DNA of 64,000 bases from Haliotis cracherodii (lineage: Eukaryota): contig NW_027266341.1 of assembly GCF_022045235.1 (NCBI RefSeq), positions 18,786,001 through 18,850,000 of the forward strand, read 5' to 3'. Below are positions 13,147 through 58,587 of the stretch, one piece after another (position 1 is the first letter of the stretch; each line of letters starts with the position of its first letter). The position numbers were made by a program, and so were the translations under genes. Below the pieces are notes generated by a model. It worked only from the letters and a program-made list of their open reading frames with translations, did not search any database and was not told the origin of the DNA.

Positions 13147-13471
13147 CTGTCCGGCCCATACTGTACCACCTGGAACTTATTGAATCCCTTGGCTGCCAGA
13201 CACGTTCTGTTGTACACAAGCTGTCGCTGGGAGCACTGGCCGAAGCTGGTCTTCCTGTAGGCTCGCCTGGTCACTCGGTCACAGTTCTTGAGGATGTCGC
13301 GGTGCCTCCATAGCCACGGACCGTCTATGAAGACGTCTTGCTTCTCCACCCATCTCGGTAGGTGGCGTAGGTTGAGCCACCACATCCGGGTACTCCAGGG
13401 TTTCAGCGAGCCATCTTCAGACGGGCTTTGTAGGAACTCCGGGAACACGCAGGTTGTCTGGACAAACGTAC
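13147..13471 (-). CDS. Internal coding exon (325 bp, phase 1 in, phase 2 out) of a putative secreted or membrane Cys-containing protein
   Basis: Acceptor ttgacttcttgctccag, donor ag|gtgagt, raised GC, open frame TFVQTTCVFPEFLQSPSEDGSLKPWSTRMWW...CLAAKGFNKFQVVQYGPD. The CxFPxxL..W start resembles invertebrate repeated extracellular domains; family not confirmed. Confidence 0.8.
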
Positions 13472-13540
13472 CTGGAGCAAGAAGTCAACTTGTATATAAC
13501 TGATCATAGCTTGTTGTGTAAGAATACTCAGTCCATATGT

Positions 13541-13786
13541 TTGTTTGTTTGTTTGTTTTTTAACGCCGCACTCAGCAATATTCCAGCTATATGACGGTGG
13601 TCTGGAATTAATCGAGTCTGGACCAGACAATCCAGTGATTTACATCATGAGCATCAATCCACGCAATTGAGATACGGTGACATGCATCAACCGAATCAGC
13701 GAGCCTGACCACCCGATCCCGTTAGTTGCTTCTTACGGCAAGCATGGGTTGCTGCAGACCTATTCCACCCCGGATCTTCACGGTTC
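13541..13786 (-). mobile_element. SINE-like family D (no tRNA head)
   Basis: (aaac)n tail, 5' end ga(a/c)ccgtgaagatccgggg; 14-bp TSD ctcagt(c/a)catatgt at 13527-13540 and 13787-13800. Confidence 0.9.
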
Positions 13787-14504
13787 CTCAGTACATATGT
13801 CACATTATAAATATCCTTACCCGGAACCATTTTGATAAAGTCAGTCTATTGTTGTTGCAGTTGAATATGAGCCAGGAATACACTCGCCATTCTGAACGTG
13901 CATTTCAACAAGTAGAATTGACGCAACTATAGGTCATTATGCAAAATTATATAGAAAACATATATCCACATGGTCTATTTCGGAGAAATCACTCGAATCT
14001 GTTGATTCTCCATTACGTATTGTATCACATGAAAAGGAAAACAAAATTTAGAATGAGAAATTTATGAACCCATTATCACACTAGGTGTATGCGAATGAAT
14101 GCAATGTTAGTGTGGTGGCACCAGGTGTTCGCGAAACAATGTAAAGTAGTGATGACATCAGGAACACGGAAAATTGTAGTTACACAAGTGTTTCAGTATT
14201 TTTCAACACCAGTGCGGAAAAACAATATCTATTGATAATTTAAACACTTGAAAACCGTACATATAAGAATGTATGAATATTATAAACGTTATCGAAACGT
14301 TACAAGGCTGAAAACACTGCAAACATAAGGCCAAAACATAGTTTTAATACCCGCATCAAATACATCATCGTCGAATAACCATTTTTGATTGTTTCATTTC
14401 CAACCACCATCAATGGGTGTATACCTTCATACGTTCCTTTGCGCGTGAGTTTATACTGACAGAATTCATAAACAAAGTGGTAATCATTGATTGTTTCAAT
14501 GAGA

Positions 14505-14755
14505 TTTGTTTCTTTGCAATATTCCGGCTTTATCACGGCGGTCTGTAATAATCGAATCTGGGCCAGACAAACAAGTGATTGATATTATGAGCAACGTCTC
14601 ACGGCGTCGGGTCACGTTAACCATGCCAAACCCTCGAACCGGACCACCCAACCCATTTAGTGGACTCGAACGACGACCGGCGGGCGGTGGGATTGTCCAA
14701 TGGTTCAGTGTTGGAATACTGCTGAAGCGGCGTAAAACCATACTCACTCTCTCTT
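14505..14755. mobile_element. Degenerate family D (minus) plus family A (plus) remnants
   Basis: cggcggtctgtaataatcgaatctgg and gcggcgtaaaaccatactcact. Confidence 0.6.
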
Positions 14756-15069
14756 ACGCAAACCATTAACAAGTACCATTAAATAATTAAATATCTGGCA
14801 ATGACCAGCAATGTTTTCTTACAATGGGTTTCGACTGGAGCAACCATTCTGATCACAAGTTGTTTTTATTTTATTTTGACAAATTGCATTCTGGATGACG
14901 TCCTGAAGTCCGATATGTGACCATGCTGATGAGACAATAACGATCAGAGAAGATTGCTATTTCTTTACATGAATTGTAATCTGCATGGCGTGTTCATGGT
15001 GCTTCCGATATGTGTCAAACTATTCCTATATATTATTTACGACAGTTAATGCCTACCGGAGGGTATATC

Positions 15070-15907
15070 AATTCAATTCAATTTCTTTATTCAACGTACT
15101 GAGGAGGCCACAGGCCTATAGTACAATCATGATTACAGGAGCAATTGATACAATCATATAATTTCCCAACTTGATTTTCTTTGTATAAAAGCATGATATA
15201 TGTACATAGAAAGAATTCTTATGGTTTCAATGTTGCTAGTGGCCAGTAATAGTTTAAACTTAAATGTACAATGGTTTATATGAAACTATTTTGGTAAATA
15301 TATTTTTATTAGTTCATCATAATGCGGACATACTAGTAAAAAGTGATACTCGTCCTCAATTAATCCTAGGTCACATAGTGGACAGAGTCTATTTTCTCTC
15401 GGAATATTTTAATATCTACCTTTCTCAATTAAAAGATCGTGTGATGAACATCGGAATCTTGCAAGTGCTACCCTAAATTTTCTAAGACTAACACTGAAAA
15501 GGTATTGCTCTGCAGTCATATATGACTTGAAACTGCTATATAACAGGGACTTTGGTGAACGCGTTAGAGTTGCATTCCATGACTGAAAATATAAATCTTT
15601 TAATCTTTGCGTTATAGCATTTATGAACAACTTCGGATAAGCAATATGTTCTAATTTAAAAATGTAACCAAAACCACAATTATTTAGCAGGTTCCTTAAG
15701 TCGGTTACCCAATTTGTTTTGCCATTGCTATCATACAAACACATCATATTGTAACATTTCTTAGGGAATCTTGAGGAGGGCATATTAAGTAGTCTTATCC
15801 AATATTTTATTATTTTCAGACGTGCTTCTATACACAAATGGACTCGTCCACATTCACCATAAACCATCACGTTTGGGGTATTAATTTTAACTTTAAAATA
15901 TCGTATC
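15070..15907 (-). mobile_element. 5'-truncated non-LTR retrotransposon 3' end (RTE-X/CR1-like)
   Basis: ORF 15409-15870 VYGECGR..IIKYW..NWV..RFRCSSHDLLIEKGRY followed by CPLC..EDEYHFLLVC knuckle; aataaa plus (ttgaa)n tail; TSD agggtatatc at 15060-15069 and 15908-15917. Confidence 0.88.
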
Positions 15908-16129
15908 AGGGTATATCGTATCAGTGTAACATTCTAATCTGGTGTTTCACCACATGTGGAGGGGTGTGTGAAAGTCGTGCACGAGGTCAGAGTGACAGAC
16001 ATAACAAAATACGTATAGTATGACGTGGTGTGTGTGTGTTGGGGGGGAGGGTTGGGCTGGGTGGGGGGTATATAAATGTCGTATACTAGGTCAGCGCAGC
16101 ATCCAAAACACGTATGTTTTGATGTAGAA

Positions 16130-16268
16130 TGTTCGTGCGCGCGCGTGTGCGTGCGTATGTGTACGTGTGTTTGTATGCATGAGTGTGAGTGCGGATTTGT
16201 GTGTGCTTGCTTGCGTGCGTGCGTGTTTGTGTGAGTGTGAATGTGCGTGTGCGTGCGCGCGTGTGTAT
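16130..16268. repeat. Imperfect (GT/GC)n microsatellite
   Basis: Alternating purine-pyrimidine gtgc/gtgt tract. Confidence 0.85.
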
Positions 16269-16269
16269 G

Positions 16270-16445
16270 TTCCGACTATATCATGACCATGTGTTTATGA
16301 ATCACTATCAAATAGTGATGACACCAGGTGTTCGCGAATAAGTGACCGCACCCTGCCCCACCGGTATTGCATGATGTGGAGTATGCTAACGGTTTGTATA
16401 GGAAACTGGTACCATGTCAGTGTAAAAATCTTCACGTGTGTTTCT
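16270..16445 (-). mobile_element. Solo Naiad-like PLE 3' end (E1)
   Basis: ttccgactat...atcactatcaaatagtgatgacaccaggtgttcgcgaa, homologous to 7787-7910. Confidence 0.8.
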
Positions 16446-16447
16446 GA

Positions 16448-16720
16448 TGGTTGGTTGGTTGGTTTGTTGTTTAACGCCGCACTCAGCAATATAACAGCTA
16501 TATGACGGCGGTCTGTAAATAATCAAGTCTGGACCAGACAATCCAGTGATTAATATCATGAACATCGATCCACGCAACTGGGATACGATGACATGAATCA
16601 ACCAAGTCAGCGAGCCTGACCACCTGATCCCGTTAGTCGCCTTTTACGACAAGCATAGTCACCTTTTACAGCAAGCATGGGTTGCTGAAGACCTATTCTA
16701 CCCCGGAATCTTCACGGGTC
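16448..16720 (-). mobile_element. Family D, full length
   Basis: Matches 13541 and 28254; ends cttcacgggtc on the plus strand. Confidence 0.9.
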
Positions 16721-18002
16721 TTGTTTGTGAAGGACAGTGGAAAAAAATACATATCTAACTATCTAAATGGGAAAACAAATTCATATTAACATTACAGATA
16801 ACGGTTATTCACACAATCCCACACTTAAAATGTGTAACTAGAGACAACAGGCACAGTTGTGGTGGGGATACCATAAATATGATACCTTAATCGCTTCTAC
16901 AAGAAATATTACAACCAACTTCAATGGTTTTCATTGAAAAGTTTCCAATGTAATTTCCATAAATTCCAAATGAGGAAACAGATAAGAAAATTGGAAGCAA
17001 AAAGAATATTACCAAGTTATCTTAATTGTTGCATTATAGAAATTTATGTACATAACACTTTTATCTTAAATGTTGAATGTTTCTTGATTATTCGTAAATT
17101 TACAATTAACGTTCAGTTATGAACATACAGATACTTGGCTTTATCATATAATGGGTAGGTTTCTCGGCAGGATAAAGCCAACGGATAAAAACGATATCCG
17201 TTGGGGTCATATGCGGATAGAGATGCAAATATCAAAGGCCAAGTAGGGACTACTTTCAGTGTTTATAAACAAACATGGCGTCGCACTTGTCATTCGGCGA
17301 TCGAGTCAGAATTAACCATCGTGAATCTGGATAAACTACAGGGATAATTGATACAATTATTTAAAAAACCAGTCTTATATACTGAAAGTCAGTGTCAAAA
17401 CTGCGACGTAACTAAGGCATTTTATAAGTTTGGGCAACTTTGGAGATATAAATTTCGAAACAATTTTGCGAGGGCACTAGGCCTAGCCAAGCAGGATCAG
17501 AAGCCATATCTGTGCTTGTAGACCTCTGCGGCTTGAAACCTTTTCCACAAATAAAAATAGTTGGGTTTAGGCGAAATATGTATGAATTGTTACCTTGTTT
17601 CGTTTTGGCGCTGTGTATACATCTGACTACACTTCTTAACGTTATGACAGAACAGGCCGACTGTGAACAATCACTGGCCGTGATGTCTCATAGACTAGGG
17701 TTAGAGTAGCTTCCCTTTGACAAAGGGCAGTTACTCTAGCGGACAGACTGATAGATTGTCGCGAAAGGCAAGTAAAAACAATTGTTGTTTTGCGTATATG
17801 TTGCTTCGCCACTGTATAAGAAACAGATTTCAGTTTGAACTATATTGGCTACTGTCGCTGTCCGACTGACACATCACCTACCCTGTGACGTAATAAATAT
17901 TAATGCGCGCATTCTAGGATAACTCGCAATGTTTAGGTAATGTTTGTGAGTGAGGGGAAGCGATTTTCAAGCACAGAATTGAAGAATGACATTATATGAT
18001 AA

Positions 18003-18154
18003 AGAGGTTATCACGCTTGTGTGTTTAGGGATGGTAAATATCCTGTATTAGGAATAAACACTATGTATTTAGCTCGCCAAGGCTCGCTAAATACAATGTT
18101 TATTCCTAATGCAGGATATTTACCATCCCCAAACACACTCGCGTGATAACCTCT
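18003..18154. mobile_element. Fold-back palindrome, probable MITE
   Basis: About 70-bp arms agaggttatcacgc...gtatttagc / gctaaatac...gcgtgataacctct around a ~12-bp loop. Confidence 0.8.
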
Positions 18155-19050
18155 GTTTAGCTAATATCTCACAAGTTCAAAATATTGTCTTTAGACACAG
18201 AACAAGATTTAAGAAATCATGTTATTTAAAACGGGATTGTAAATAAATACAGATGATATAGTTTATTTAAAAGATACTGAAAATAAAACATATACATTAT
18301 TTTACCATTTACTGATTTTATAAACTTTTGAAACAGAAAATTGACACATGCACCTTTATAAGAAAGATTACTTACACTGTATATGCATCTATAGGAGAGG
18401 AATATCGTTTATTTTATATGCTTATGTCTTATCACAAAAGCCACATTTTGCACAATAATATCTATTAAAACTCAACACAGTTAAATATTCAAAATGCGAA
18501 CAGCCTCGTTGCCTATCAAGAAATCAGGCTAACAATCATGTTTACACCGCCTTCGAAACATGTAGCTGCCAACCACGTTTAGACAGTACCGGGAGGCAGC
18601 GAATCCCAAGGGAGCCAGGACAGAGTCACATCCTTGTCGCTCTCATCTTACATGGCAGTAATTGGCCTCCCTTTGCACAGGGGATTACCCTTAGCATTGT
18701 TCACATGGCCACTTCGGGAACACCAAGAGCATTGATTCGCGTGGCCAGTGAGGATTCTAAGCTTTCCGTTCATCTGCACTCTTAATTAACAAGTTCTATA
18801 ACATGAAATGAACCTTGATTTTAATCTTTCAGTGATGACGCAGTCTCCAACTTAATTGGATCACTAAAACACATGTGCGTCCTATACAGATTGGTTTTGT
18901 CACTGTGGTGTCATACAAAATATATTTAGAGGCACGTAGTAATTATAATACTAAGTTGGGTTTTAACGTCGCTTTGAACAGGTTTTGTTACATGACAATG
19001 TGTCAACTTAATAACACATTTTGTGCATGCGCTAAATTCTCACCATAAAC

Positions 19051-19429
19051 GACCGCCTCCGTGGTCTAGTTGTAGAGCGTCTGCCCGGAGAGCGGAAGGT
19101 CGGTGGTTCGATCCCCGGCCGCGTCATACCAAAAGACGTTAAAAGATGGTACTTGTTGTTAGTCTGCCTCGGCATTAAGGGGCTAAAACAAGGACTGGTC
19201 GGTTCGGAGTCCGTATACTGTTTCTGAATGGGGTATTCATATTAAACTGCGAGATGGTATCTCAGTGGTCTAGCACTGTAAATCGGCATCAGTCCGGACT
19301 AGTACAATCAGCCACACAAACACACACACGTACATGCACGTCGCTATATAAGTGCAATAATCTTGTACGCGACGTTAAACGCCATTTCATCTCACCTCAC
19401 CTTACCTCACCTCACCTCACCTCACCTCA
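19051..19429 (+). mobile_element. SINE family B, full length
   Basis: A/B boxes, (cacct)n tail, TSD caccataaac at 19041-19050 and 19430-19439. Confidence 0.93.
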
Positions 19430-19519
19430 CACCATAAACCATGCCCAAAGTGTTCATTATTACCCCGATCAGTGGATCAGTGTGCACTCGATTTTTATTC
19501 TCAACTCCCCGGGGATAAT

Positions 19520-19990
19520 ACGTAATGCCGAATCTACAATGTGACGAAGGCACAAGCGCTTATTTGATTAAGGACGGGAATGGTGAACGCCATCCGGGTA
19601 CGACGACAAGCAGTAAACCAGGTCATGGAGCCCAATTCATTTAGTCGCCTCTCGCGACAGTCATCCTCACAGGGCTGCAAAGTGTCAAACTCAGTAAGAC
19701 CTCCAAAATGTCATACAAACAGGCCGGTGAGTTTTGATTTCAAAAGTAACCCAGTAACAACAGTCAACACTTTCAGATATATATTTGAACCTGGGGCAGA
19801 TAAACCATTGGTACAGGGTACACAATGCGTCTTCACTTAAGTCAATTCCTTTAAGAATGGTATACCGCTTGCATACCACACCCCACCTGCTATCCCCAAA
19901 GGGTTACATTGAGTAGGGTGTTCACCTTCGACCACAATGCTATCTCCATTAACACACACCTGACACCCAGTTGATCAGACAACTGAATCT
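19520..19990 (-). mobile_element. Possible very old L1/Tx1-like LINE C-terminal remnant
   Basis: Fragmentary minus-strand peptides LKGID..ICPRFKY and KVL..VTGLLLK..DTLQ..C loosely resemble the zf-RVT region. Confidence 0.25.
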
Positions 19991-20037
19991 CCAGTTCCTG
20001 CATTTACACGAACAACTTCAAATGACCGGCAAGTGTT

Positions 20038-20145
20038 GGTGACGGGTGCCATCGGTGGGGCCCGATACGATCTCCGTTTCGCGAACACCTTATACCACTA
20101 CTTGATAGCGATACGTAAACATATGATATAGTCGGAATCGTACAA
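20038..20145 (+). mobile_element. Solo PLE 3' end (E1)
   Basis: gtgacgggtgccatcggtgggg...ttcgcgaacacct...atagtcggaatcgtaca. Confidence 0.75.
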
Positions 20146-20210
20146 AGGACACTGCGATTTCTTTTGATTATGATTATGGAAATTGTTTCGACGCTTTTGC
20201 CTCCATAAAT

Positions 20211-20557
20211 GTGAGTCGTTTTTAACTCCGTTTTGAACAGAATTTAAGTTATATCACGGTGTGTCTGACATGTACAGGAGGAACGCCCCAAATGAGGCAG
20301 GCCGTAGACGTCTATAACCTTGGTTAAACAATCTGTCTTTGGTTTGTTGCGGACAAACTGAGGATCATAATCAGGGAGATTCGAACCGACTAATGCTCAG
20401 CGGATCCTGGCACGAAATTATTGTCTCGAACGTTTTTGTATAATGACAGGGCCATAACTAACCACCCATGATTTCCTAATCTAGTTGAGACATGGGTGAC
20501 TCAGTCATCTTAGGCGCGCCGCTGCTACACTCACACGCGCGCGCGTGCGCACGCACG

Positions 20558-20600
<43 letters not shown>

Positions 20601-20660
20601 CATGGATATCCTTATATAAGTGCAATAAGACGCGACGTTAAACCCAATTTCCCCTCACAG
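20211..20660. mobile_element. Diverged family C (minus), then a C-like head joined to a family B tail containing (CA)n
   Basis: gtgagtcgtttttaactccg...; gggtgactcagtcatcttaggcgc; ataagtgcaataagacgcgacgttaaac. Confidence 0.6.
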
Positions 20661-21390
20661 TTAATGCAGAAATAAGTTAATCTGGACGACTGCACGAGGT
20701 ATGATATCGTTCATTTTAACCTGATTCGATTAAGTAATGTGTAAAGCAAATCATAAATGAATTAGTAACAAAAACAAGACCAAATACTTAAGATTGTCAT
20801 GGATAACTCCGCGTTAACTAAAACTACACTCAACATTAAAGCTGGGATATAATGTACAAAGTAGGCTGGTGAAGAGTATACATTCCCTTACATCGATATC
20901 CTCCGATAGCATAACCCTGTGGGACTGCCTACAATTGACCGGTCACCGTGTAGTGTCCTCCATGTTGAACCGTCGACCTGCACGTGCAGATAACGCCGTG
21001 ACGTCACATACCGAGTCATCTATTTTGTCATTGTGAATCTGGTGGAACCGACACTGTAAACAGCCAGCAATTGATCCAGCGTTTTGCGACCCCTGCAGAT
21101 GACTATCGCCGGATGATGAATAGCCAGGGCTAATAGCGGCTGCAACGTGGACTCTGTTTATACACCTTCATCACACAAGGGGCGGTGTGTCCTCGTGCAG
21201 GGGGAATCACGTCCGATTTATTATTTTGTATCCTTCTCACCTCTTTTATTTTTTGGGCATATAAGCATATATTAAAATAAATAAATAAAATAAATAAAAT
21301 AACACTTAGTAGACACTTTAAGGAGTACTTCCCTCTGATCAACTGGCAGTAACGGCAGGCTTAGTTCAAGTATCTCAAACTAACCTTGTG

Positions 21391-21421
<31 letters not shown>

Positions 21422-21428
21422 AGTAGTA

Positions 21429-21765
21429 TACTACTCAAAAGAAGTTAAACACTCAGTATAACAGGTTAACTATGATATGAAAGAATCCGGTGTTCTTTAA
21501 CTTCATTTGCGTAACTTCTTTGATAGGCATTTAGAAGTTGGATTACTAAGTAAGGATCAGAATATATGGATGAACAACTTCTTCATTACAGTTAAGAGCG
21601 ATGTTTCTATGTAGGTTCTAACACTGTTATCAAGCAAGTCAACAAGTATATATACAGTCAGGTATATATAACGGTGTTAGAGCCTACACCGAAACGTCGC
21701 ATTTAATTGGATCAAAGAAGTGTTGTTCATCCATTAATTCTCATCCTTATTTCTTTTGAGTAGTA
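21429..21765. mobile_element. Tc1/mariner-type MITE containing a Penelope fold-back
   Basis: TIR tactactcaaaagaa / ttcttttgagtagta flanked by TA. Confidence 0.75.
21513..21750. mobile_element. Penelope pseudo-LTR inverted pair, older copy
   Basis: Homologous to 48173-48390; imperfect palindrome with ggtgtt..acaccgaaacgtcg. Confidence 0.75.
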
Positions 21766-22060
21766 TATATCACTCTTGTAGCGGATGTTTACTCTGGAAG
21801 TACAAAGACAATGCCTCAGTATGTTTGTAGTTCAAGACAGTGTTGCATTCTAGACGGGGAATGATGCTATGAAGTGGATGTGGGGGTGGGGGGGGGGGGG
21901 AGTAGTGGTGGGGGTGGTTTCAAAATGGCGGACATTTTTTCGCAAGTAAGGAACAACGGAATTAAAGAACAAATGTGACCATCAATTCCGTTACAATTGT
22001 GTAATTATTATGTTTACACTTCGGGAATGGACCGACCTTCAAGACGTTTATCATTATCAG

Positions 22061-22226
22061 GGACCCGTTTCGCAAAACGATCATAGCACTACGACTGTCA
22101 TCAACCTATGTTAAAGTATGGGACTTACGATCATATTAGAGCTAGGGCTCCCGTATACGTAAGTCCCATGCTTAAATATGTACTTACAGCAGTCGTAGCC
22201 TAACGACCGCGTCTGAAACGGGGTCC
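22061..22226. mobile_element. MITE related to 53927-54030
   Basis: TIR ggacccgtttc / gaaacggggtcc; internal inverted tatgttaaagtatgggacttacg. Confidence 0.7.
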
Positions 22227-22244
22227 ACTTCATCGGGGCTAAAA

Positions 22245-22912
22245 GCCCCTTTACACAGGGCTGCGACCTTTGTGCCAACTTTGAGCGATCAAAAACTGGC
22301 CAGGACGCTCAATGGTCGCCTGAACCCAGAAAGTCATGTTTCTATGCAACTGATCCAGCAGTTGTTCAGCAGTAACTGCTCGAGTTGTTCAGTGTCTGCA
22401 ACCACAGAGAAACACTGCAGGTACAAGCTCTATATTTATAGCAGGTTGAGGAGGCATTACAGGTAGCTCAAATGAGGGCCATGGTGTCTCAAGGTTTGCC
22501 GTGGTCGCCGAATGAAGGCATGGCGGTCACCACAGTCATCGTTCAATGCACACTGTTTGTCGCCAAAAGGAGGCACAAGGGAGGCAGAAGTATCGCCCAG
22601 ATTTACGGGAATATATTTCAGCAGAACGCATCTATTACCTGGCGACCATTTGCCGACCACTGTGCCTTCATTCTGCAACAACGACAATGCTTGTGCCTCC
22701 TGTCTGCCTCCTTTGAGCCACCTTTGAGCAACCAGGCCCCTCGGCGACCTCGTTCAAAAATTCACGGCGACCATGGCGTCCATGGCCATGTCTGAACCTT
22801 CTTGGAACGACCGAGGCAACTATTCTGCCTCCTTTGAGCCTCCAACGACGACCTGGCAAAGTTTATGATCGCACACGGGAGGCACAAAGGTCGCCATCCT
22901 GTGTAAAGGCCC
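22245..22912. mobile_element. GC-rich non-autonomous DNA transposon (PIF/Harbinger-like)
   Basis: About 32-bp imperfect TIRs cctttacacagg..gcgacctttgtgcc / ggcacaaaggtcgc..cctgtgtaaagg; internal ggcgacc and tgcctcc subrepeats. Confidence 0.75.
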
Positions 22913-22974
22913 CATATAACCTGTCTTGGTTGACTTTCCCTTGTGTGATCAACGCTACTGGCAGTATCTCTCTG

Positions 22975-23100
22975 TGGTGGGGTGGCTTGCCACGCCGAAG
23001 AGGGTTCGATTTCCACATAGGTACACAGTGTGAAGCCTATTTCTGGTGTCCCCCGCCGTTATATTGCAAAAACCGGTGTAAAACCATGTTCATTTACTCC
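22975..23100 (+). mobile_element. Degenerate family A SINE
   Basis: cacgccgaagagggttcgatttcc...tgtgaagcctatttctggtgtcccccgccgt. Confidence 0.75.
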
Positions 23101-25202: not shown

Positions 25203-25299
25203 GTTACAACAAAAGCACAAACGAGTCCAGGAAAGATGAAAGTTACAAACTAAGACCCTATCCACACGAGCAGCGGTTGGACACAACGTTTAAGTGTGA

Positions 25300-48390: not shown

Positions 48391-48949
48391 TCTTGTCCAG
48401 TGTGGATTCACGTTTCACTTTTGGTTTAAGCATACATGCTCTTGTGATTCAGAATCAAACACTCGGGTTTTAATAAATTACAGACATATATATATATATG
48501 TAGATATAAAAGTTTAACATGTCTACAGCATGGTATTTCAGTGTAAATGAATACAGTTTTAGCTGCACGGAAATAAACTTTAATACGAATGTTTCCATAT
48601 TCACATATATACTAACGTCATTGTTGCATGGCGGACACCCTTCATTCACTAGAGGTGATAACGGTGATGCATAACTATATATCTCACATATAACTTTATA
48701 TCGAACATAACTATATATCTCACCCGTCTCGTGAACACATGGTGGCATGGTGCCATAATACATTTACAGTGATTCGTAAGTGTAGTTCTTGAACATGCGG
48801 TTTTTAGTTTGTTTGAATTCATTTCTTTTCATTAGGCATTAATATGTGTTGACATTAAAAGGGAATTAAAGTATTTCATTTCAGAGTACATGTATCTTTA
48901 ATTCACAATGACTACACAATTCTAATTAATCAAAATTTGCCATATACAT

Positions 48950-49210
48950 GTGAGTGATTGAGTTGTGTTTTACACCGCTTTAAACTGTAGTTCATTAATA
49001 ACACGGCATGTCAGCTAAATTTGGGAGGAAAGTCCGAAATGATGTAAGTTTGAGACTTTTTGATAAAATTCCACGAGTACGGGTAACCTAGAATCATAAT
49101 CAGGGCCAATCTGGGCCCCTAGCCCACGATCATAGATTTCTGGGGAACATTAAGAACGGAACTGTGCTCGTTGAAATACGGCGCCACAGGCGACTTGGCC
49201 ACCCATGACC
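48950..49210 (-). mobile_element. Diverged family C
   Basis: tgtcagctaaatttgggaggaaagtccgaaatgatg...ggcgcc..cgacttggccaccc. Confidence 0.78.
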
Positions 49211-49920
49211 TTGCATCCGAAGTACACATGATAAAGTGACATGCAATGTTTAAACATTTATCAATGCACAAACCTACATATAGAGTACGAGTTTGTCGTA
49301 AAACATTCAGTCTTAATGAACGCGATATTTGTGAAACACAAGTTTAAAAATACATCTGTGGCAAACATGATATCAACGAAATAATGTGATTACCCTTGAA
49401 ACAGTTCCAGCGCATACTGATGCATCTTTCACAATGTCAAAGTTTTACGTCAGTTTAATGGGCCCATGTAGAATACAGTCTTCCAACTAGGGATTCAGCC
49501 TTATGAATTATACACATACATTATATATTTATCTGTACTGACGTTTGATGATGGTTTGTCCTGGAGGTTTCCTGACTTGAAGAACAATGCGATGATAGCG
49601 CTAACGTCACAACGACCTCAAAGTGTTTAGGCAGTAAAAAGCATTAAACTGTCTTGAGGAGAACCTTTAACATTTTGTAACATGCAGGTTGTGATCATGC
49701 TGAATTTCTGTGCAGATAACCAAGATACACTTTGTAATTACTTATTCATCCAATAGCCTGTCTGTCGCGACGTTCAGATATACTTAACTGTCTTTACAAG
49801 AGCACACGACACTGGTAGGTAATATAACTCAAGATAATATTTCATTTTTCTTGTTTACAGGTCGTCCCATGGTAGGCGTCAGACAACAAACACTGACCTC
49901 CTAATGCAAATGGTGTGAGT

Positions 49921-50060
49921 AGTGGCGGGTGCTGCCGGTAGAACAGGGTATGCGAACACCTGGTGTCATCACTGATATTCAGTAATGCATTCATATAATT
50001 TTCACCACTATTGTGTCTTTTTATGCCAAAAATGAATCTGTTTCGGCAGATATTTGAGGC
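49921..50060 (+). mobile_element. PLE 3'-end subfamily E2
   Basis: gtggcgggtgctgccggt...gcgaacacctggtgtcatcac. Confidence 0.68.
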
Positions 50061-50214
50061 TGATTATTTATATATTTATATTTATATAAAACCAAGGGTA
50101 TTGCCCCATTTTGGTCATGTTCCATGGGTGAGTGAGTAATGTGCAGATTAACGCCACATTCAAGCTTTTGAGTAATGTGCAGATTAACGCCACATTCAAG
50201 CTATTGAGTAAAGC

Positions 50215-50380
50215 GACCACCTCTGTGGTCTAGTGATAAAGCGTCCGCTCGGAGAACGGAATGTCCGGGTTTCGATCCCCGGCCGCGTCATACCAAAAGA
50301 CGTTAAAAGATTGTACTTGTTGTTACCATGTCTTGCGCTCGGCATTGCGGCGCCTTAGATGACTGGGTCGCCCGTGCCCA
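50215..50380. mobile_element. Family B head (plus) fused to family C head (minus)
   Basis: ...gcgctcggc-att-gcggcgccttagatgactggg; att is shared by both families at the junction. Confidence 0.8.
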
Positions 50381-51194
50381 CTATAATAACGTGTACTCTA
50401 ACTTCATGATATCAGCTGATACTTCTCTGTACTGGGTTAGGTGTTGTGTTTGCTAACAACTTCAGCAACGTCATTGCGTGTCGGTTCAATGTGGCAGGAA
50501 GCCCAAAACGAGGCAGCTTTTTAACGATAACCACTACGTGACACCATGAAATCGAGTATGGTGCTGACATCGGATCCTGACGCACCTCACTTAATTATTT
50601 AACCTTATATAATTATATGAATGGCTTGAACAAGATGGCGTTAAAACATGGAAAAAACTATATTTAATATCGTTGCTTGGATCATCCACAGAAAAACAGT
50701 ATGATTTTATTTTCAGCTGCTTGCAGTGTGTTAGCGTTACAGAATTTTAAACTAGATAAAGAAATCGGTAATAGAAGCTTTGGCAGTAGAAATGATAACA
50801 ATCATTGACAATAATGTGAAAGCTGCAAGATACACTTGTCGCCGGGAATGCCATTTGCCTATGTGATATGCTCATGGAATGATCTGATAACGTTCTCATG
50901 TGAGATATGTTATATTTGAGCTTACAATTCAAAACTCTGATAATGGCGTTATATCTTACTTCCGTTGCCTTGACGTAAACCTGCTCCAATCTACGTGATA
51001 AATATAAATATAAAACTCTGAATTTATCCAATTCGGGCCAATGGCTATTTGGGTAATTGCTCTGTGTAGAGTTGCTTCCCTTAACTGTGCCAGGATCCTT
51101 TTGCCGTGGGTTTGAATCTTAGTTTCGCCCAGATTATGATCCTTAGTCATGCCCATATACCCAGTGTGGTCTCACCAGTGTGGTAAACGTCCCT

Positions 51195-51750
51195 CGTGTC
51201 TTGTTGTCTTACTCTGAACACATGGATTAAGTATTGGAAGGGCCGAGGAATCTCATCCGTGTAACGTTGTGCCTTTAACGTCCCCAGAACTTGCACCAAT
51301 TTGCTACCAGCGTAGGAGATGGCTGCCCTCTTTCTCACACTACCACCACCAAATCTGTCCGCTTTCTGTCTGCAGTTTCGTGCATAACGTACCTCGCGGC
51401 GCATCTAAACACGACGTGTACCATCCGCAAGGCGAAGGATGAAACGTGACTCGTCACTAAACCAAACTTGTCTCCATCGCAATTGTGGCCATCACCCAAC
51501 AAGTGATGTTGCACGTGCATATCATGTTGGTGTGTTTCGGCGCCAGGCTCTCACGTGGTTGTGTTTTTGCGATTGTTCCATCTTTTCACCAAATTTCTGC
51601 AGTTACTCATTCTTTCCACAAAAATCAATCCCAGTCCATGCAGGAATGACCAATTTATTTTTGGTATTTTGTATGGATGTCGGCAACACCCTGTCAGATA
51701 TTTACGATTTTACTACTTTTGCGCTTCTTTTTTTGCAGAGTATATTTCTT
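51195..51750 (-). mobile_element. Tc1 transposase remnant
   Basis: VWFSDESRF..ADG..RV and RYARNC..DRFGGGSV..AAISYAG..LVQVLGTLKAQRYTDEI. Confidence 0.85.
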
Positions 51751-51857
51751 GAATACTATCTCATTCGACTAGTGGCCACGAGTCAAAATCGTTTATATCA
51801 AACCGACCTCGATACACATGATGAACATCAGTGCAATTGAGACACATAACAACGATG

Positions 51858-52018
51858 TGAGTGAGTATGGTTTTACGCCGCTTTTAGCAATATTCCAGCA
51901 ATATCACGACTGGGGACACCAGAAATAGGCGTCACACATTGTACCCATATCGGGAATCAAACCCGGGTCTTCGGAGTGACGAGCGAACGATTTAACCACA
52001 AAGCAACCCGGCCGCCCC
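51858..52018 (-). mobile_element. SINE family A
   Basis: Full length; probable TSD aacaac(g/t)atg. Confidence 0.9.
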
Positions 52019-52247
52019 AACAACTATGGACAGATAAGCAATACGCCATCATACGGCGTTCAACGCTTGCCTGTATAGCCATTTAGTGAATCAAAATCTC
52101 GGGAATCTAATCTGCTTTATATCCTTAATGTCGTGTTGTTAAATCACTTCACATAACTATTAGTTTAATAGACGATATCTTAATATTAGCCGTATCAACT
52201 ATAGTCGTGTGCCATGATGTTCAGCTTAGTCCAGTGCACTCCAACAG

Positions 52248-52277
52248 GTGAGGTGAAATGGGGTTTAATTATGTAGC

Positions 52278-52344
<67 letters not shown>

Positions 52345-52619
52345 CAGTGTGAGTGTAGCTGCTTGTACTAGTCCGGACTGATGCCGATTTATAGTGCTAG
52401 CACAGTAAGATACCATGCCGCAGTTTAACATGAATACCCCACTCAGTGTACTGACTCCGAGCCGACCAGTCCTTGTTTAAGCCCCTTAATGCCGAGCCCC
52501 AGACAGGGTAACAACAAGTACCATCTTTTAACGTCTTTTGATGTGACGCGGCCGGGGATTGAACCCCGGACCTTCCGCTCTCAGAGCAGGCGCTCTATCA
52601 CTAGATCACGGGTGCGGTC
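52248..52619 (-). mobile_element. SINE family B with expanded internal (GT)n
   Basis: TSD gcactccaacag at 52236-52247 and 52620-52631. Confidence 0.92.
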
Positions 52620-53460
52620 GCACTCCAACAGAACAAGCTTCAGCTGACTGGCGGGGTAGCCTACTGGGTAAAGAGTTCGCTCGTACCACCGAAGGCCCGG
52701 GTTCGACAACCCTCATGGGTACAATGTGTGCAGACCATTTCTGGTTTTCATCTACGTGATATTGCTTGAATATGCTAAAAGTGGCTTTATCATCTAAGTG
52801 AGTGAGTGAGTGAGTTGGGTTTAACGCCGCTTTGAACAGTATTCAAGTTATATCACGGCGTCAGCTTATTTAAAGCCAGTACGGATACCTGGTACGTTAA
52901 CCGCTGACTGTCGTTTCAGTGTTTGTCAAGATTCACTATGGGAATTCTGGGGCAGTATAGTTCCCCTATGCTGTGGTAAGCAACGTAACCTGGCTGATTG
53001 TGTGTCATCGTACGCAGACGAAGGCGTTCAGTGATCACGCTATCAGTTACTGGTTTAGAGGAATATTCTAGTCTATCACCCCGGTAATATTTCGGTACCA
53101 AACAGGGGGCAAATTATGACAGGTTTAAACTTAAAGGTCATGCTATCTCCAAGTACGATAAATATGATAGCATTTGAAATCGAGTAGATTTGCATGTTTT
53201 TTTTAAAGGTCTTTTGAAGGTCTCCAAAGTTGGCACAGGAGAAGGGCCAGTACTATATGTTGTCCGGTGAGTAGTACATAATTCACTTCTTTGTTTACTT
53301 CCTGTCTGGATATTTGGACCATAGCAACAGTTATTTACGAACACATTCAGTTCACACACTAACTACAAGCGGTATGCCAATGTTCAGATCAGGTTGAACT
53401 TTGGTCACCGTTATAGAAGGCGTTATATGACGTATACCACTGTTCATTTCAGATGGTACC

Positions 53461-53630
53461 GGGGCGGTCGTGTAGCCTAGTGGTTAAAGCGTTCGCTCGT
53501 CACGCCGAAGACCCGGGTTCGATTCCCAACATGGGTACAATGTGTGAAGCCCATTTCTGGTGTCCCCCGCCGTGATATTGCTGGAATATTGCTAAAAGCG
53601 GCGTAAAACCAAACTCACTCACTCACTCAC
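53461..53630 (+). mobile_element. SINE family A, young full-length copy
   Basis: Perfect 12-bp TSD tcagatggtacc at 53449-53460 and 53631-53642. Confidence 0.95.
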
Positions 53631-53926
53631 TCAGATGGTACCACATGAGCATATCCATTAGGGAAACACTATGTATAACTGCGTCAGTAGATCGACAGTC
53701 AGTTAGTGAAGGCAATGCCCTTCTCGAGCGATTCTATAAATATGAATTCTCAAGCCATATCACGGCAGAGGATAACAAAATGGGCTTCCCACACAATACC
53801 CATTTGAGGAATCAAACCTGGGTGTGACGAAAGAACGCGTTACCCACAAGACTACCCCACAGTCCCTTTGTTTAAGCTGCTGTCACCGGGGACACTACGG
53901 CCTGGTTTCCTGTCCTTGAACACCTG

Positions 53927-54030
53927 GGCCCATTTGCACAAAACAATCTTAGCGCTAAGACTATTGTAAGCCTATGTTAAAGTATGGGAGTTAAGATCAT
54001 CGTTTTAAGATCGTTTTGTGCAAGTGGGCC
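53927..54030. mobile_element. Harbinger-like MITE
   Basis: TIR ggcccatttgcacaaaacaatctta / taagatcgttttgtgcaagtgggcc; 3-bp TSD ctg. Confidence 0.8.
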
Positions 54031-54756
54031 CTGGTGTCCTCACTGTGAATCTGTGATTGGTTGATTCTCGTGGGATAAATTTAGATCACTGCTTTCCATT
54101 TACGCGGACTGCGACATCCTCAGCATTAACAGAACATGATTAATTACGGCGTGTCATGATTATCGATAATTTGTTCACGAAAACAAAGTCCGCAGTAAAT
54201 GCAGCAAAATAAAACAATGCAACAGCATGCCATACGCTTCCATAGCTTAGGAAACCGATCGATAATGGCATGATACAGATTTACAGTGCTTATAGCATTA
54301 AATATAATTTGATAACCTAACACTATCAGGGGACGTGTATAGGTCATCCCGATGTCTCACGGTATGAGGGCATTACAATATGATATAAATACATATACAT
54401 GTACAAATATACATATCATGAAATTATTGCTATTTCCGATCACGGGTGCAGAGTTGCGTCCCTTACAAGTGCCAGAATACTATGATCATGGGTTCGAATC
54501 CCAGATTCTCCGTGATTATGATTCTTGATGTCAGCCTGTCCTTATTCGTACGCTCCCCAAAATTGGAAGATGTGAAAGACCGGGCTTTCTTCTTCAAATA
54601 CACAAATATGTATAATATGTGTAAACAAATGTACATGCGTATGGATATGTATAAAATGTATAACATTATTAAAAATACATATGTAAATGTATAACAAATG
54701 CATTGTATGTATAACATGTATTAAAAATACATATGTATTGTATAAAATGTATACTA

Positions 54757-55108
54757 CGAGGGGCGTTCAATAAGTTTTGCAACTTCAATATAAGACCTAG
54801 AGCTGTAGGGTGGGTGATTTAACTGTACAGCCCAGACTTAGCCCCCAGTGACTATTTCCTGTTCCGGCAAATGAAATCTGCCCTACGTGGAAGACGCTTC
54901 CATGATGACAGAGGACATAAAGGCTGCCGCAGAGGCGTGGTTAGAGGGCCAATCTGCGGATTTCCATAAAAGTGATATTTAAAGCTTAAAGGACCAATGG
55001 AATAGGTGTATTGAGTTGAATGGAGATTATATTGAAAAATAAAAGTGCAAAAGATATTCTGCGACTTGGTCTTATATTGAAGTTGCAAAACTTATTGAAC
55101 GCCCCTCG
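54757..55108 (+). mobile_element. mariner internal-deletion derivative
   Basis: Perfect TIRs of at least 30 bp (cgaggggcgttcaataagttttgcaacttc), TA TSD, remnant YSPDLAPSDYFLFRQMKSALRGRRF and WNRCIELNGDYIEK. Confidence 0.95.
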
Positions 55109-55368
55109 TATGTATAAAATGTATAATCTGTATGATGGGAATAGAATGAAAATAAGTCAAAGGTTGACCCGCATTATTGACAGGCTTATATAACATATGT
55201 GTGTGTGTGTAGAAACAGCACAGTGAAGTTCGAACTCTCAGGCACAATATAGTAATAATTAAATAAGTGGAGTAAGAAATTTCAATGAACACAGTTTTAA
55301 TTGGCTAGCGCTTTCAACTCGTACCACGTACGAGTCTCATCAGGCCATAGGGAGTGAGTGAGTGAGTG

Positions 55369-55500
55369 NNNNNNNNNNNNNNNNNNNNNNNNNNNNNNNN
55401 NNNNNNNNNNNNNNNNNNNNNNNNNNNNNNNNNNNNNNNNNNNNNNNNNNNNNNNNNNNNNNNNNNNNNNNNNNNNNNNNNNNNNNNNNNNNNNNNNNNN
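55369..55500. other. Assembly gap (132 N)
   Basis: N run following (gagt)n. Confidence 1.
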
Positions 55501-56639
55501 GACCTGTGACATTTTCTGTCATAAATATTTAGTGATCTTATTGATAGTCACTGATAATGCTTGCTTACTTTGGTATTTTCATGGCATCAAATGAGTCTCA
55601 TATTACGATTGTTAATGTGTTATGTATCTGGACGCTTGTCAGTTGTACATTGGTGTCCTACTGCTGATGTATACAGCATAGACCTACGTGTACAGGGTGA
55701 AGGGGTATTAAATGACATGTCTTGGATGATGGATTGAAATGAAAACAAACACGTTCATCAAAACTTCATGATAATAGTACATGAATAATTGAGTTGATCG
55801 ACAGAGTAAATAGTTCATTCACAACGACGATCTAGTGGCTGGCATTCAAAATGTCACCTCTTTACAAGCGGTGAGATACACGATAATACACTATTGATCC
55901 AATAGAATTCCAACCCATATAAAGAATTCCAACGTCATTTCTGGAATCATATCCAATCACAAAGAATCTGTTACAGTATGTATAAACCAACGCTTATCTT
56001 CGAATTGACAAACAAGGCACGTTAAACGCATTTCACATACCCCCAACCCGTGATGAGGCATCGCTCTTGATGTTAGGAGCTGATGTAGGCTTTTTTGTCT
56101 GTATGTAATATACATGATAGTAGATACGATGTTTGAAGTTTGTCTTTAATATCCTTTTCTGGTGGTCATAACAAGCTTATATTATTTGAATGTTAATCCC
56201 AAGATACATCTATTCGAATAATAGCTTGTCGGTTGAGTGCGTGTGCATTGGGTATTACGTGGCTTGTCTGTAGGCTAATGGCTAAGCGGGGACTAGTGGA
56301 CGTCAGGTGGTATTTCAAGAAAATATACTCGGAGTGAGTGCTTGAAATAATTTGTGTACATTACGGAATCCTTAACTTGGTTTACCACTTGTTGGGGCAC
56401 AAATTGAAAGATTAATGTAATATTTTTATTTTTGCAGTTGAATTAAACATCCCCGGGTGGTAAGCTCAGTGTGACGCTACTGGTTGTGAACGACGCCGTG
56501 ACCATGATGCCACCACGGACGTTATGTAATTAGTGGGGATGTCCTGCTGGCCGTGTGTGTAATGGTGAAGCTATCGGGGAGAATTGCACTTGCAAGAAAT
56601 ATTCTCCAGTTGATTATGACTGTCAACCCTCATCGAACG

Positions 56640-56965
56640 ACCCCCCTCCCTCCTCCCCTACCCCCCCCCCCCCCCACACACACACACACATCAGAGACAC
56701 ACACCCCACACCTCCTAAACCACACGCCACGCCACGCCACGCCACATCATACCATACCACGCCACATCACATCAGACAACTGCACACCAAATTACGCCAC
56801 ACCACAACAGCCAACACCACTCCACACCACGTCACATCAGACATCACATCAGACAACACCACGCCACATCAGACAACACCACACCACACCACACAAACAC
56901 ACACCACACCACACAACATCACCACACATCACACCACAGCACACAACACACATCCCCACCCCGCA
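56640..56965. repeat. C/A-rich low-complexity tract, degenerate (CACAC)n
   Basis: Direct reading. Confidence 0.9.
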
Positions 56966-57181
56966 CCGACACAATGACAGTACGCGTGTACCCCAGCTAC
57001 ACCAGTGTGGTGGGTGCCCGATGTAAGTGTAACTATAGTATTGACGTTTATAGTTTCAATACATTCATCAACTCGATTCCAACTTGCTGTGTCATTTGCC
57101 CAGAACTCGACCTTTCAACACCCAACGTGTTACCCATGAAAAGTACGAGAACACCCGGTGTCGCCAGTGATATGTCAGTTA

Positions 57182-57356
57182 CAGTAAACTACGGTTATAA
57201 CGAACTCGAAGGGACCACTAATTTTAGTTCGTAATAACCGTTGTTCGTTATAAACATATATACAGCATTTATACAACAAATGTTCGGGACTAATGAATAG
57301 GTTCGTTATATCCGTCAGTTCATTATAAGCGTGTTCGTTATAAACGTAGTTTACTG
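57182..57356. mobile_element. Tc1/pogo-like MITE
   Basis: TIR cagtaaactacggttataacgaa / ttcgttataaacgtagtttactg with TA TSD; the same left end recurs at about 62841. Confidence 0.88.
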
Positions 57357-58523
57357 TATTTTGAATAATTTCGATCTTATTTTTGTGACTGAGCTACAGG
57401 AAAGAATACCATATGGTATTGACATTTCAATGTTTCTGTCGACTCGAAATCTTAACTTCACCAACAGGGTTAGAATACCCTCCCCCACCCGTATATCACC
57501 CAATGCAATAAACGTTAACATGTGAAGGTCCAGCACATGTAGATTCATCCGTATCTGCATCGCTCGTGATGAAGGACAATGTTGTATGGTAAAGTGCCAG
57601 TATACAATATACATGCAATAGATGTGCTGTTTGATCATACAAAGATTACATTATTTTAGCAATAATTCCTAAATACACTTATTCTCAAAGCGTTGATTTT
57701 GTGATTAATTAACTGCCAAATATATGATGATGCTCTATAATTCATTCGTCATCGTTACATTACAAACTAGAGTAATATTCCACTCAAATACTTGAAATAT
57801 GTTTAAACATTAAAAGCAAGGTAACTGATATTCCACCTATATGCGTCCGATTTAATTAACGGATAGAAAATCAATCTCCATCTATATACATAAAGAATTT
57901 ATTGTTTCTCTATCTTATTTTCGCTGAACGTTTCCAACCAAAGATAAGAAAATACACAAAATAATTTATATGGTTGGCGGTTTACGGAAACACATAGGAC
58001 CTAGAGTAGTCGCCATCGCTTGCTGTGATGTCAATGCGATTCCAGTGTGGACGGCTTGGTGACGGTGGTCGTCACCAACTGTGGTGTATCCACACACCTC
58101 TCCTTCAACATTAAAAGCGTCTTGTGTTCTGTTAAATGTTCTTATATACTAAGGGTTATTCGTGCCCCCTGTGACGCGATGTGGCACTTAGCATTATACC
58201 ATTCACCCATTTCCTTTATAAATCATAAATAGTCTAAGCACAAGCGTGTTATCGACATCCCGTTATGTAACCTATAGGTGAAAAGTAGACATTGCTTATC
58301 CTTTGGTCAAAACGTCTAAATTTATGCAGTCGTTATCTTGCATCACCTTGTTCTTACTATAACTGCTCTAACTGTTCATATAAACACAATAAAAGTGTAA
58401 TCATTCCAGTTTAATATCGCCGCCACCACTTTGTCAAATCGTTTACCTAGCGCTCGCTACGTCTGAATGCACTTAACTGAGACAACATACCACTGTAGTA
58501 GACATGCACAATAAACAACGTAC

Positions 58524-58587
58524 CTGGAGCCTGCAGGATGACGATAAACACACCAAGCCCCGCAATAAACATTCCAGAACACTCCAT
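58524..58587 (-). CDS. First coding exon, signal peptide MECSGMFIAGLGVFIVILQAP(G)
   Basis: ATG at 58587 with an upstream in-frame TGA, hydrophobic h-region, phase-1 donor cag|gtacgt matching the 13471 exon. Confidence 0.72.

What the first reader, a model, noticed from the sequence alone, without database searches (positions are those of the whole stretch)
13465..58530. 45-kb intron whose two splice junctions carry the identical 14-mer GCTCCAG|GTACGTT
Seen: aacgtacctggagc occurs at 13465-13478 and at 58517-58530. On the minus strand one copy is the donor of the signal-peptide exon and the other is the acceptor of exon 2, each cut at the central AG|GT, and the match stops abruptly on both sides. 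Splice consensus explains only about 5 of the 14 bases. Inference 1: the intron was gained when a retroelement made a 14-bp target-site duplication of an AG|GT proto-splice site (TSDs here are 8-14 bp) or by tandem duplication, then grew to 45 kb. Inference 2: splicing regenerates exactly the same 5' splice site at the exon junction, so exon 2 could be removed by re-splicing, as in recursive-splicing exons of long introns.
Basis: partly seen in the sequence, partly recalled or inferred. Interest (0 to 1): 0.85.

Follow-up and report, generated by a model that had tools for sequence, protein, structure and literature searches.

The report
Identical 14-mer at both intron ends
The same 14 letters do sit on both splice junctions of a 45-kb abalone intron, but the intron looks ancient and ordinary, so the match is most likely a rare coincidence and not a scar of intron birth.

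Summary
GCTCCAG|GTACGTT (minus strand) lies at 58530-58517 and 13478-13465, and it occurs only five times in the 1.18-Gb genome.

The gene model holds too. RefSeq protein XP_071087563.1 (Haliotis cracherodii, same contig) maps at 100% to 16 exons. Its N-terminus is exactly exon 1 (58587-58524) joined to exon 2 (13471-13147) in phase 1. No coding exon lies between them.

The match ends abruptly, and the flanks are no more alike than random sequence. From this gene's own splice sites I estimate a chance in-register match at about 3e-7 to 2.5e-6 per intron.

Recent gain is not supported:
- 600 bp at the intron's start and 59 bp at its end are unique DNA, not transposon ends.
- There is no trace of a tandem duplication.
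- Isoform pairs in Pomacea, Ruditapes and Octopus place a phase-1 intron in the same junction codon.
- Half of the repeat lies in two codons found only in Haliotis.

Splicing does rebuild a strong donor, as in known "RS-exons".

The assembly gap lies inside the intron, so no reading frame depends on it, but the intron length does.

The parts
58524..58587 (-). Coding part of exon 1: ATG at 58587-58585, 64 nt, ends in phase 1. Encodes the signal-peptide-like MECSGMFIAGLGVFIVILQAP plus the first base of Gly22.
   Evidence: Identical to residues 1-22 of RefSeq P0043. Single copy in the genome.
58517..58530 (-). Donor-junction copy of the 14-mer, GCTCCAG|GTACGTT. The exon ends at 58524 and the intron starts at 58523.
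13472..58523 (-). Intron 1: GT-AG, phase 1, 45,052 nt including 132 N. No ORF over 172 aa. Contains SINE copies, minisatellites and decayed repeats.
55369..55500 (.). Assembly gap inside intron 1, preceded by a (GTGA)n run. It affects only the intron length and the linkage of exon 1 to exon 2.
   Evidence: Continuity not testable.
57917..58516 (-). First 600 nt of the intron after the repeat. Unique in the genome, so not a recognisable transposon end.
   Evidence: self-hit only.
13538..13786 (-). SINE copy (about 250 bp, (AAAC)n tail, thousands of copies at 88-92% identity). It lies 59 nt upstream of the acceptor-side repeat, and the 59 nt between them are unique.
13465..13478 (-). Acceptor-junction copy of the 14-mer, gctccag|GTACGTT. 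The intron ends at 13472 and exon 2 starts at 13471.
13147..13471 (-). Exon 2: 325 nt, phase 1 in and phase 2 out, donor CAG|GTGAGT. Encodes the conserved N-terminal Cys-x-F-P-x-F-L-Q-S module of a DUF7042/7043/7044 + ShKT protein.
6795..13146 (-). Intron 2: 6,352 nt, phase 2. Only 4 of 14 in-register matches between its junctions.
6730..6794 (-). Exon 3 (65 nt, ...TPKFACMKFLRRSENVVQV...). The remaining 13 exons lie beyond the window's start.

Best explanation
Intron 1 of an abalone gene for an uncharacterised secreted or membrane protein (DUF7042/7043/7044 + ShKT; RefSeq XP_071087563.1, Haliotis cracherodii) is an ordinary, old, phase-1 intron.

It separates the signal-peptide exon from the mature protein and splits a Gly codon (G|GT). 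This is the well-known arrangement at signal-peptide cleavage sites.

The 14-nt identity of its two junctions is a coincidence built on shared splice consensus. CAG|GT(A) is favoured at both donors and acceptors, and about eight further bases match by chance.

Part of the match arose late. Its right half lies in a two-codon insertion that only Haliotis has. The outer three bases of its left half lie in a codon that differs among Haliotis species.

Steps shown: the repeat, the junctions, the phase, the unique intron ends and the absence of a duplication trace.
Steps inferred: the age of the intron (from protein isoforms, not DNA) and the chance origin of the match.
For: Gene model:
- P0043 maps at 100% identity to 16 exons with GT-AG introns. 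Its contig length of 61,937,186 equals that of this contig.

No insertion or duplication footprint:
- 600 bp after the donor-side repeat are unique in the genome.
- 59 bp before the acceptor-side repeat are unique, then an unrelated SINE begins.
- Local alignments of exon flanks against intron ends score no better than shuffles.
- The flanks of the two copies are 9/40 and 7/40 identical.

Age:
- Pomacea isoforms X1 and X2 are identical except for 15 residues inserted directly before the junction Gly.
- Ruditapes X1 and X2 differ by one Val at the junction, the pattern expected from two adjacent AG acceptors 3 nt apart (a tandem NAGNAG acceptor).
- Octopus sinensis has ...KIKG|IWSDC where an O. 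vulgaris model has ...NKHR|IWSDC. Gly versus Arg is what a phase-1 split codon gives.
- A Gly sits 5 residues before the conserved Cys in Gigantopelta, Lottia, Patella, Pomacea and Octopus. Haliotis has that Gly followed by two extra residues (T-F).
- The codon at -7..-5 reads Ala, Val or Phe in different Haliotis species.

Other:
- Within-intron junction matches for the other 14 introns run from 1 to 9 of 14 (mean 4.5). The 210 cross pairs have a mean of 4.4.
- Intron 5 uses the same donor heptamer GTACGTT.
- An excess of phase-1 introns at Gly codons near signal-peptide cleavage sites is established (PMC1626468).
Against: - A perfect in-register 14/14 match is rare under chance: about 3e-7 to 2.5e-6 per intron from this gene's own splice-site frequencies. 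The largest value among 210 cross pairs is 10/14.
- If I assume about 2e5 introns, that gives only 0.06-0.5 such introns per genome.
- The PWM rests on 14-15 sites, so the estimate is rough.
- The age argument rests on proteins and isoforms, because no DNA of another mollusc could be fetched.
- RNA support for the RefSeq model could not be checked.
Confidence: 0.68

Rival explanations
1. Footprint of intron birth or re-birth. A retroelement or other DNA was inserted at a 14-nt staggered break in a once continuous exon at ...GCTCCAGGTACGTT.... Both copies of the duplicated target supplied AG|GT, and the insert then grew to 45 kb.
For: - The layout is exactly the expected signature: a direct repeat in register on both junctions with abrupt ends.
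- Junction repeats of 4-12 bp mark new introns in Daphnia (PMC4202315).
- The chance probability is low.
Against: - Both intron ends next to the repeats are unique DNA with no poly-A tail or transposon terminus.
- A repeat still perfect at all 28 positions implies a young event. Yet the intron is 45 kb and its inserted sequence has no surviving relatives.
- A phase-1 intron in the same junction codon is inferred in Pomacea, Ruditapes and Octopus. So this model needs a loss followed by a regain in the same codon and phase.
Confidence: 0.07
2. Secondary homogenisation of an old intron's ends. Repair templated by the spliced transcript or its cDNA copied a few bases across the exon-exon junction onto each genomic junction. 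The last 7 nt of exon 1 went in front of exon 2, and the first 7 nt of exon 2 went behind exon 1. The change survived because GTACGT works as a donor and CTCCAG works as an acceptor.
For: - It fits an old intron with unique ends, abrupt and symmetric 7+7 borders, and a lineage-specific state.
- It avoids the low chance probability.
- Other agents report that splice junctions in this genome are often copied into the adjoining intron as 'mirage' minisatellites. I did not check those notes.
Against: - There is no direct evidence, and I know of no described case of such short junction-spanning conversion without intron loss.
- It needs two events 45 kb apart, or one complex event.
- No junction-derived tandem array adjoins exons 1-3 here.
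Confidence: 0.1
3. The identity matters for splicing. Exon 2 is an 'RS-exon', and after intron 1 is removed the rebuilt CAG|GTACGT donor is used again. That would remove exon 2 together with intron 2 and give an out-of-frame, regulatory or wasteful product.
For: - By sequence the spliced junction rebuilds the identical donor over -7..+7, with 8 of 9 positions matching the CAG|GTAAGT consensus.
- The upstream intron is long.
- Hundreds of annotated, mostly constitutive human exons have this layout and are kept in by the exon junction complex (PMC6224609).
- Exon 12 of this gene also starts with GTAAGAG.
Against: - Exon 2 encodes the conserved N-terminal module and is 325 nt long, so skipping it shifts the frame.
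- All four Haliotis RefSeq proteins include it.
- The left three bases of the repeat vary among species. A 9-nt donor match is all that re-splicing would need, so this idea does not explain 14 nt.
- No reads could be examined.
Confidence: 0.1

Closest known systems
Phase-1 intron at the signal-peptide cleavage site (Tordai and Patthy, as summarised in PMC1626468)
   Same: The intron falls after about 21 residues, in phase 1, and splits a Gly codon (G|GT). An A-x-G motif ends a hydrophobic leader. The junction Gly is conserved across molluscs.
   Different: Nothing essential. Only the perfect 14-nt junction identity and the 45-kb length stand out.
Annotated RS-exons, whose start rebuilds a 5' splice site at the exon-exon junction and is repressed by the exon junction complex (Blazquez et al. 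2018, PMC6224609)
   Same: Exon 2 begins with GTACGT and exon 1 ends with CAG. So the spliced junction rebuilds a strong donor after a long intron.
   Different: No evidence here for re-splicing or for repression. The organism is a mollusc, which that study did not cover. Here the rebuilt donor equals the used donor over 14 nt, which the RS-exon concept does not require.
New introns flanked by direct repeats from staggered double-strand breaks (Daphnia, PMC4202315) and introner or transposon insertions with target-site duplications
   Same: [quoted passage not shown]
   Different: Those introns are short, young and lineage-specific. Their repeats are 4-12 bp. This intron is 45 kb, has unique ends, and is inferred to be shared across mollusc classes.
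Intron creation by tandem duplication of an AGGT-containing exon segment (recalled from memory: Rogers 1989, Hellsten et al. 2011; I did not look up either paper)
   Same: AG|GT at both copies.
   Different: That model predicts similarity extending beyond the junction into the intron. None is seen here.

Membership tests
Insertion-born intron (target-site duplication or staggered-break footprint) | Direct repeat on both junctions, in register with the splice sites | tested here: met
   14/14 identity with AG|GT at the centre of both copies.
Insertion-born intron (target-site duplication or staggered-break footprint) | Inserted DNA next to the repeats is a transposon end or a copy of other genomic DNA | tested here: not met
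   600 bp (donor side) and 59 bp (acceptor side) are unique in the genome. No tail or terminal repeat is present.
Insertion-born intron (target-site duplication or staggered-break footprint) | Intron absent at this position in related lineages | tested here: not met
   Protein isoforms and alternative models place a phase-1 intron in the same junction codon in Pomacea, Ruditapes and Octopus. This is indirect, because no foreign genomic DNA was available.
Intron made by tandem duplication of an AGGT segment | Exon flank resembles the opposite intron end beyond the junction | tested here: not met
   Local alignment scores lie within the shuffle range for all four comparisons. Flank identity is 9/40 and 7/40.
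RS-exon (recursive splicing exon) | Exon starts with a partial 5' splice-site motif, so the junction with the preceding exon rebuilds a donor | tested here: met
   CAG|GTACGT is rebuilt and is identical to the used donor. Definition taken from PMC6224609.
RS-exon (recursive splicing exon) | Observed second splicing step: exon-skipped product or lariat from the rebuilt donor | not testable with these tools
Phase-1 signal-peptide intron | Phase 1, split Gly codon, at the end of a hydrophobic leader | tested here: met
   Exon 1 has 64 coding nt and the junction codon is G|GT. The leader is MECSGMFIAGLGVFIVILQAPG. The cleavage site was judged only by the -3/-1 rule, and no predictor was run.
'Mirage' splice-junction minisatellite | Tandem copies of a junction stacked against the exon | tested here: not met
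   No tandem array adjoins exons 1-3. The two copies are 45 kb apart.

The most novel reading that the evidence does not exclude
The two junctions of an ancient intron were made identical secondarily. Either short transcript- or cDNA-templated repair wrote the exon-exon junction sequence onto both genomic junctions, or selection favoured a rebuilt donor that lets exon 2 be re-spliced out. Either way, the identity would be a product of cross-talk between the two ends of one intron and not of chance.
Probability: 0.15. Interest if true: 0.6.

Novelty: new member of a known kind. Interest (0 to 1): 0.28.

Why it matters
If the repeat were a birth scar, it would be a rare dated example of intron gain in a mollusc, a group where intron positions are thought to change very slowly. 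The evidence here points the other way, to an old and typical signal-peptide intron.

What remains is a clean, testable curiosity. A constitutive coding exon rebuilds, base for base, the very donor that was just used after a 45-kb intron. That makes it a natural candidate for asking whether repression of re-splicing by the exon junction complex, known from vertebrates and flies, also operates in molluscs.

It is also a caution for sequence-only scans. A junction direct repeat alone does not date an intron.

Tried and rejected

Genomic DNA of orthologues:
- One alignment was too divergent for the search for related loci.
- Two metagenome scans found nothing.

Other searches:
- Pfam on exon 2 alone and on five intron ORFs gave nothing.
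- A short-query protein search for transcript fragments of Haliotis returned only the Gigantopelta model.

Ideas rejected:
- Tandem-duplication or 'mirage' origin, because there is no extended similarity and no array next to the exons.
- The 14-mer as part of a repeat family, because the other three genomic copies have unrelated flanks.
- The 41-nt minisatellite at 44411-44921 as a copy of the exon 1 donor. It shares only CAG|GTAC with it (by eye).
- A hidden paralogue or second allele, because exons 1 and 2 are single copy.

Exons were searched by reference. In scripts only the split codon at each junction was checked against the RefSeq protein.
Full report
**1. Observation**

The 14-mer AACGTACCTGGAGC occurs exactly twice in the window, at 13465-13478 and 58517-58530. 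A chance recurrence of this particular word is expected 0.01 times per window.

On the minus strand the upper copy reads ...ATCCTGCAG GCTCCAG|GTACGTT gtttattg.... The lower copy reads ...gttgacttctt GCTCCAG|GTACGTT TGTCCAGACAACC.... The identity stops at once on both sides. The 40-nt flanks are 9/40 and 7/40 identical, which is random level.

The word occurs five times in the 1.18-Gb genome, and the other three sites have unrelated flanks.

A bare 14-mer repeat is not unusual. Markov-1 simulations of this window give about 14 such pairs per 64 kb and 0.10 pairs centred on AGGT. The point of interest is only that both copies sit in register on real splice junctions.

**2. The gene and the junctions**

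Exon 2 alone finds a mollusc-wide family of roughly 700-residue proteins. A full-length family member as query gives the named orthologues and their precomputed domains DUF7042, DUF7043 and DUF7044, and several of them are named as ShKT-domain proteins. A direct Pfam scan of the local RefSeq protein gives the three DUF domains.

The 90% identity cluster of the Haliotis rubra protein holds four RefSeq proteins. Those of H. cracherodii (XP_071087563.1, P0043) and H. rufescens begin MECSGMFIAGLGVFIVILQAPGTFVQTTCVFPEFLQS....

The contig holding the window is 61,937,186 bases long, the same length as the contig recorded for P0043. So this is very probably the black abalone assembly on which that model was made.

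P0043 maps at 100% identity to 16 minus-strand exons between C78:18714357 and 18844587. All 15 introns resolve uniquely as GT-AG.
- Intron 1 runs from 58523 to 13472 (45,052 nt including 132 N) and is in phase 1.
- Exon 2 is 13471-13147 (325 nt).
- Intron 2 is 6,352 nt.
- Exon 3 is 6794-6730.

No coding exon lies between exons 1 and 2 in this model. Exons 1 and 2 are single copy in the genome.

Exons were searched by reference. In the script only the split codon at each junction was compared with the RefSeq protein.

**3. The assembly gap**

The gap (55369-55500) lies inside intron 1, about 3 kb from exon 1, after a (GTGA)n run. No exon or frame depends on it. The intron length and the physical linkage of exon 1 to exon 2 do depend on that scaffold join.

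**4. How rare is the match?**

For the other 14 introns of this gene the in-register junction identity is 1 to 9 of 14, with a mean of 4.5. The 210 donor-acceptor pairs from different introns have a mean of 4.4 and a maximum of 10.

Position frequencies from these sites give two estimates of the probability that the acceptor equals this donor 14-mer:
- about 3e-7 when intron 1 is left out;
- about 2.5e-6 when intron 1 is included.

If I assume about 2e5 introns per genome, that is 0.06-0.5 such introns per genome. So the match is rare but not impossible. It was found in a scan that looks for any oddity, which widens the field.

Consensus helps the match along. Five of 15 exons here start with GT and three with GTA. 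Intron 5 uses the same donor heptamer GTACGTT.

**5. Tests of the birth-scar reading**

(a) A target-site duplication should flank the ends of the inserted element.
- The 600 bp after the donor-side copy have no other copy in the genome.
- The 59 bp before the acceptor-side copy are unique as well. Upstream of them lies a common 250-bp SINE with its own (AAAC)n tail.
- Neither end shows a poly-A tail or a terminal repeat.

(b) A tandem duplication should leave similarity beyond the junction. Four local alignments of exon flanks against intron ends score within the range of shuffles.

(c) A repeat that is still perfect implies a young event, but the intron is 45 kb with no recognisable source.

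**6. Age of the intron**

The test is therefore indirect, using isoforms and alternative gene models.

- Pomacea canaliculata: isoforms X1 and X2 are identical except for 15 residues inserted directly before the junction Gly (HLT|G-ADATC against HLT|A...AK-G-ADATC).
- Ruditapes philippinarum: X1 and X2 differ by a single Val at the junction (S|ATTEC against S|VATTEC). This is the pattern expected from two adjacent AG acceptors 3 nt apart (a tandem NAGNAG acceptor) in phase 1.
- Octopus: O. sinensis has KIKG|IWSDC where an O. vulgaris model with another first exon has NKHR|IWSDC. Gly against Arg is what a phase-1 split codon gives when only its first base changes.
- Short-contig ORFs that read through exon 2 carry intron-like sequence, not a leader, upstream. 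They also read through the conserved exon 2 donor as ...GR-Y.

A Gly lies five residues before the conserved Cys in Gigantopelta (ITG|IRSSC), Lottia, Patella (PG|LEGSC), Pomacea and Octopus. Haliotis has the same Gly (PG|) followed by two extra residues, T-F, and then VQTTC.

I draw two conclusions:
- The intron sits in the homologous Gly codon and phase across gastropods, bivalves and cephalopods. It is therefore very probably ancient.
- The bases ACGTT of the exon 2 copy belong to a Haliotis-specific insertion. They cannot be a relic of the intron's origin.

In addition, the codon at -7..-5 of the exon 1 copy is Ala in H. cracherodii and H. rufescens, Val in H. asinina and Phe in H. rubra. 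So the outer part of the identity is not conserved within the genus.

A phase-1 intron in a Gly codon at the signal-peptide cleavage site is a textbook pattern (PMC1626468).

**7. Re-splicing**

By sequence, joining exon 1 to exon 2 rebuilds CAG|GTACGT, the very donor just used. It matches the CAG|GTAAGT consensus at eight of nine positions. That consensus is from my own knowledge.

This is the definition of an RS-exon. Hundreds of annotated, mostly constitutive human exons have this layout and are protected from re-splicing by the exon junction complex (PMC6224609).

Here, use of the rebuilt donor would remove the 325-nt exon 2 and shift the frame. All four Haliotis RefSeq proteins include exon 2. 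No reads could be examined, so this stays a hypothesis. It also does not explain identity beyond about 9 nt.

**8. Context from the scan**

Earlier notes report that 'mirage' minisatellites, which are tandem copies of exon-intron junctions, are common in this abalone genome. I did not verify those notes. In this window no tandem array adjoins exons 1-3.

**9. Verdict**

The observation and the gene model are confirmed.

The most likely account is an ancient, ordinary phase-1 signal-peptide intron whose junctions match by a rare coincidence on top of consensus (confidence about 0.68).

Not excluded:
- secondary homogenisation by transcript-templated repair (about 0.10);
- a functional role of the rebuilt donor (about 0.10);
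- a true insertion scar after loss and regain (about 0.07).

The decisive tests are cheap. Compare both junctions in the public Haliotis and other gastropod genomes, run a genome-wide census of junction identity with the RefSeq annotation, and look in RNA-seq for exon 2 skipping and lariats.

Noticed in passing
G000:C3:34065663-34067069 (+), C3:29070387-29071727 (-), C3:40498988-40500427 (-): Three distant paralogues (26-29% identity) of this 16-exon gene lie in uninterrupted open frames of 654-690 aa. They look intron-less over most of the protein and may be retrogenes or an old intron-less branch of the family.
   Followed up: no
G000:C78:18732408 (start of exon 12, outside the window): A second exon of the same gene starts with a donor-like motif (acceptor ccggtag|GTAAGAG). 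Its intron 11 has 9 of 14 in-register junction matches, the next highest after intron 1.
   Followed up: partly
G000:C78:18767173 (donor of intron 5, outside the window): Intron 5 uses the same donor heptamer GTACGTT as intron 1, and intron 7 starts with GTACGAC. GTACG donors therefore seem common in this gene (3 of 15).
   Followed up: no
window 13465-13471 (-), residues 23-24 of the protein: Haliotis proteins carry two extra residues (T-F) right after the junction Gly, compared with Gigantopelta, Lottia, Patella, Pomacea and Octopus. This 6-nt insertion at the very start of exon 2 is what makes the exon start look like a donor.
   Followed up: partly
window 44411-44921: A 41-nt minisatellite (12 copies) whose unit carries CAG|GTACC on the minus strand, a donor-like motif, deep inside intron 1. 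It shares only that consensus with the exon 1 donor.
   Followed up: partly
window 58560-58568 and 58508-58516 (-): The 9-mer TGTTTATTG occurs in exon 1 (codons 6-8) and again directly after the donor-side 14-mer in the intron. This is probably chance, at about 0.02 for a 100-nt region.
   Followed up: no
P0076 and P0030 (Gigantopelta aegis RefSeq): The Gigantopelta orthologue appears split into two RefSeq loci. One covers exons 1-2 (148 aa, reading into an intron) and one starts at the exon 3 Met. This is probably an annotation break across a long intron.
   Followed up: no
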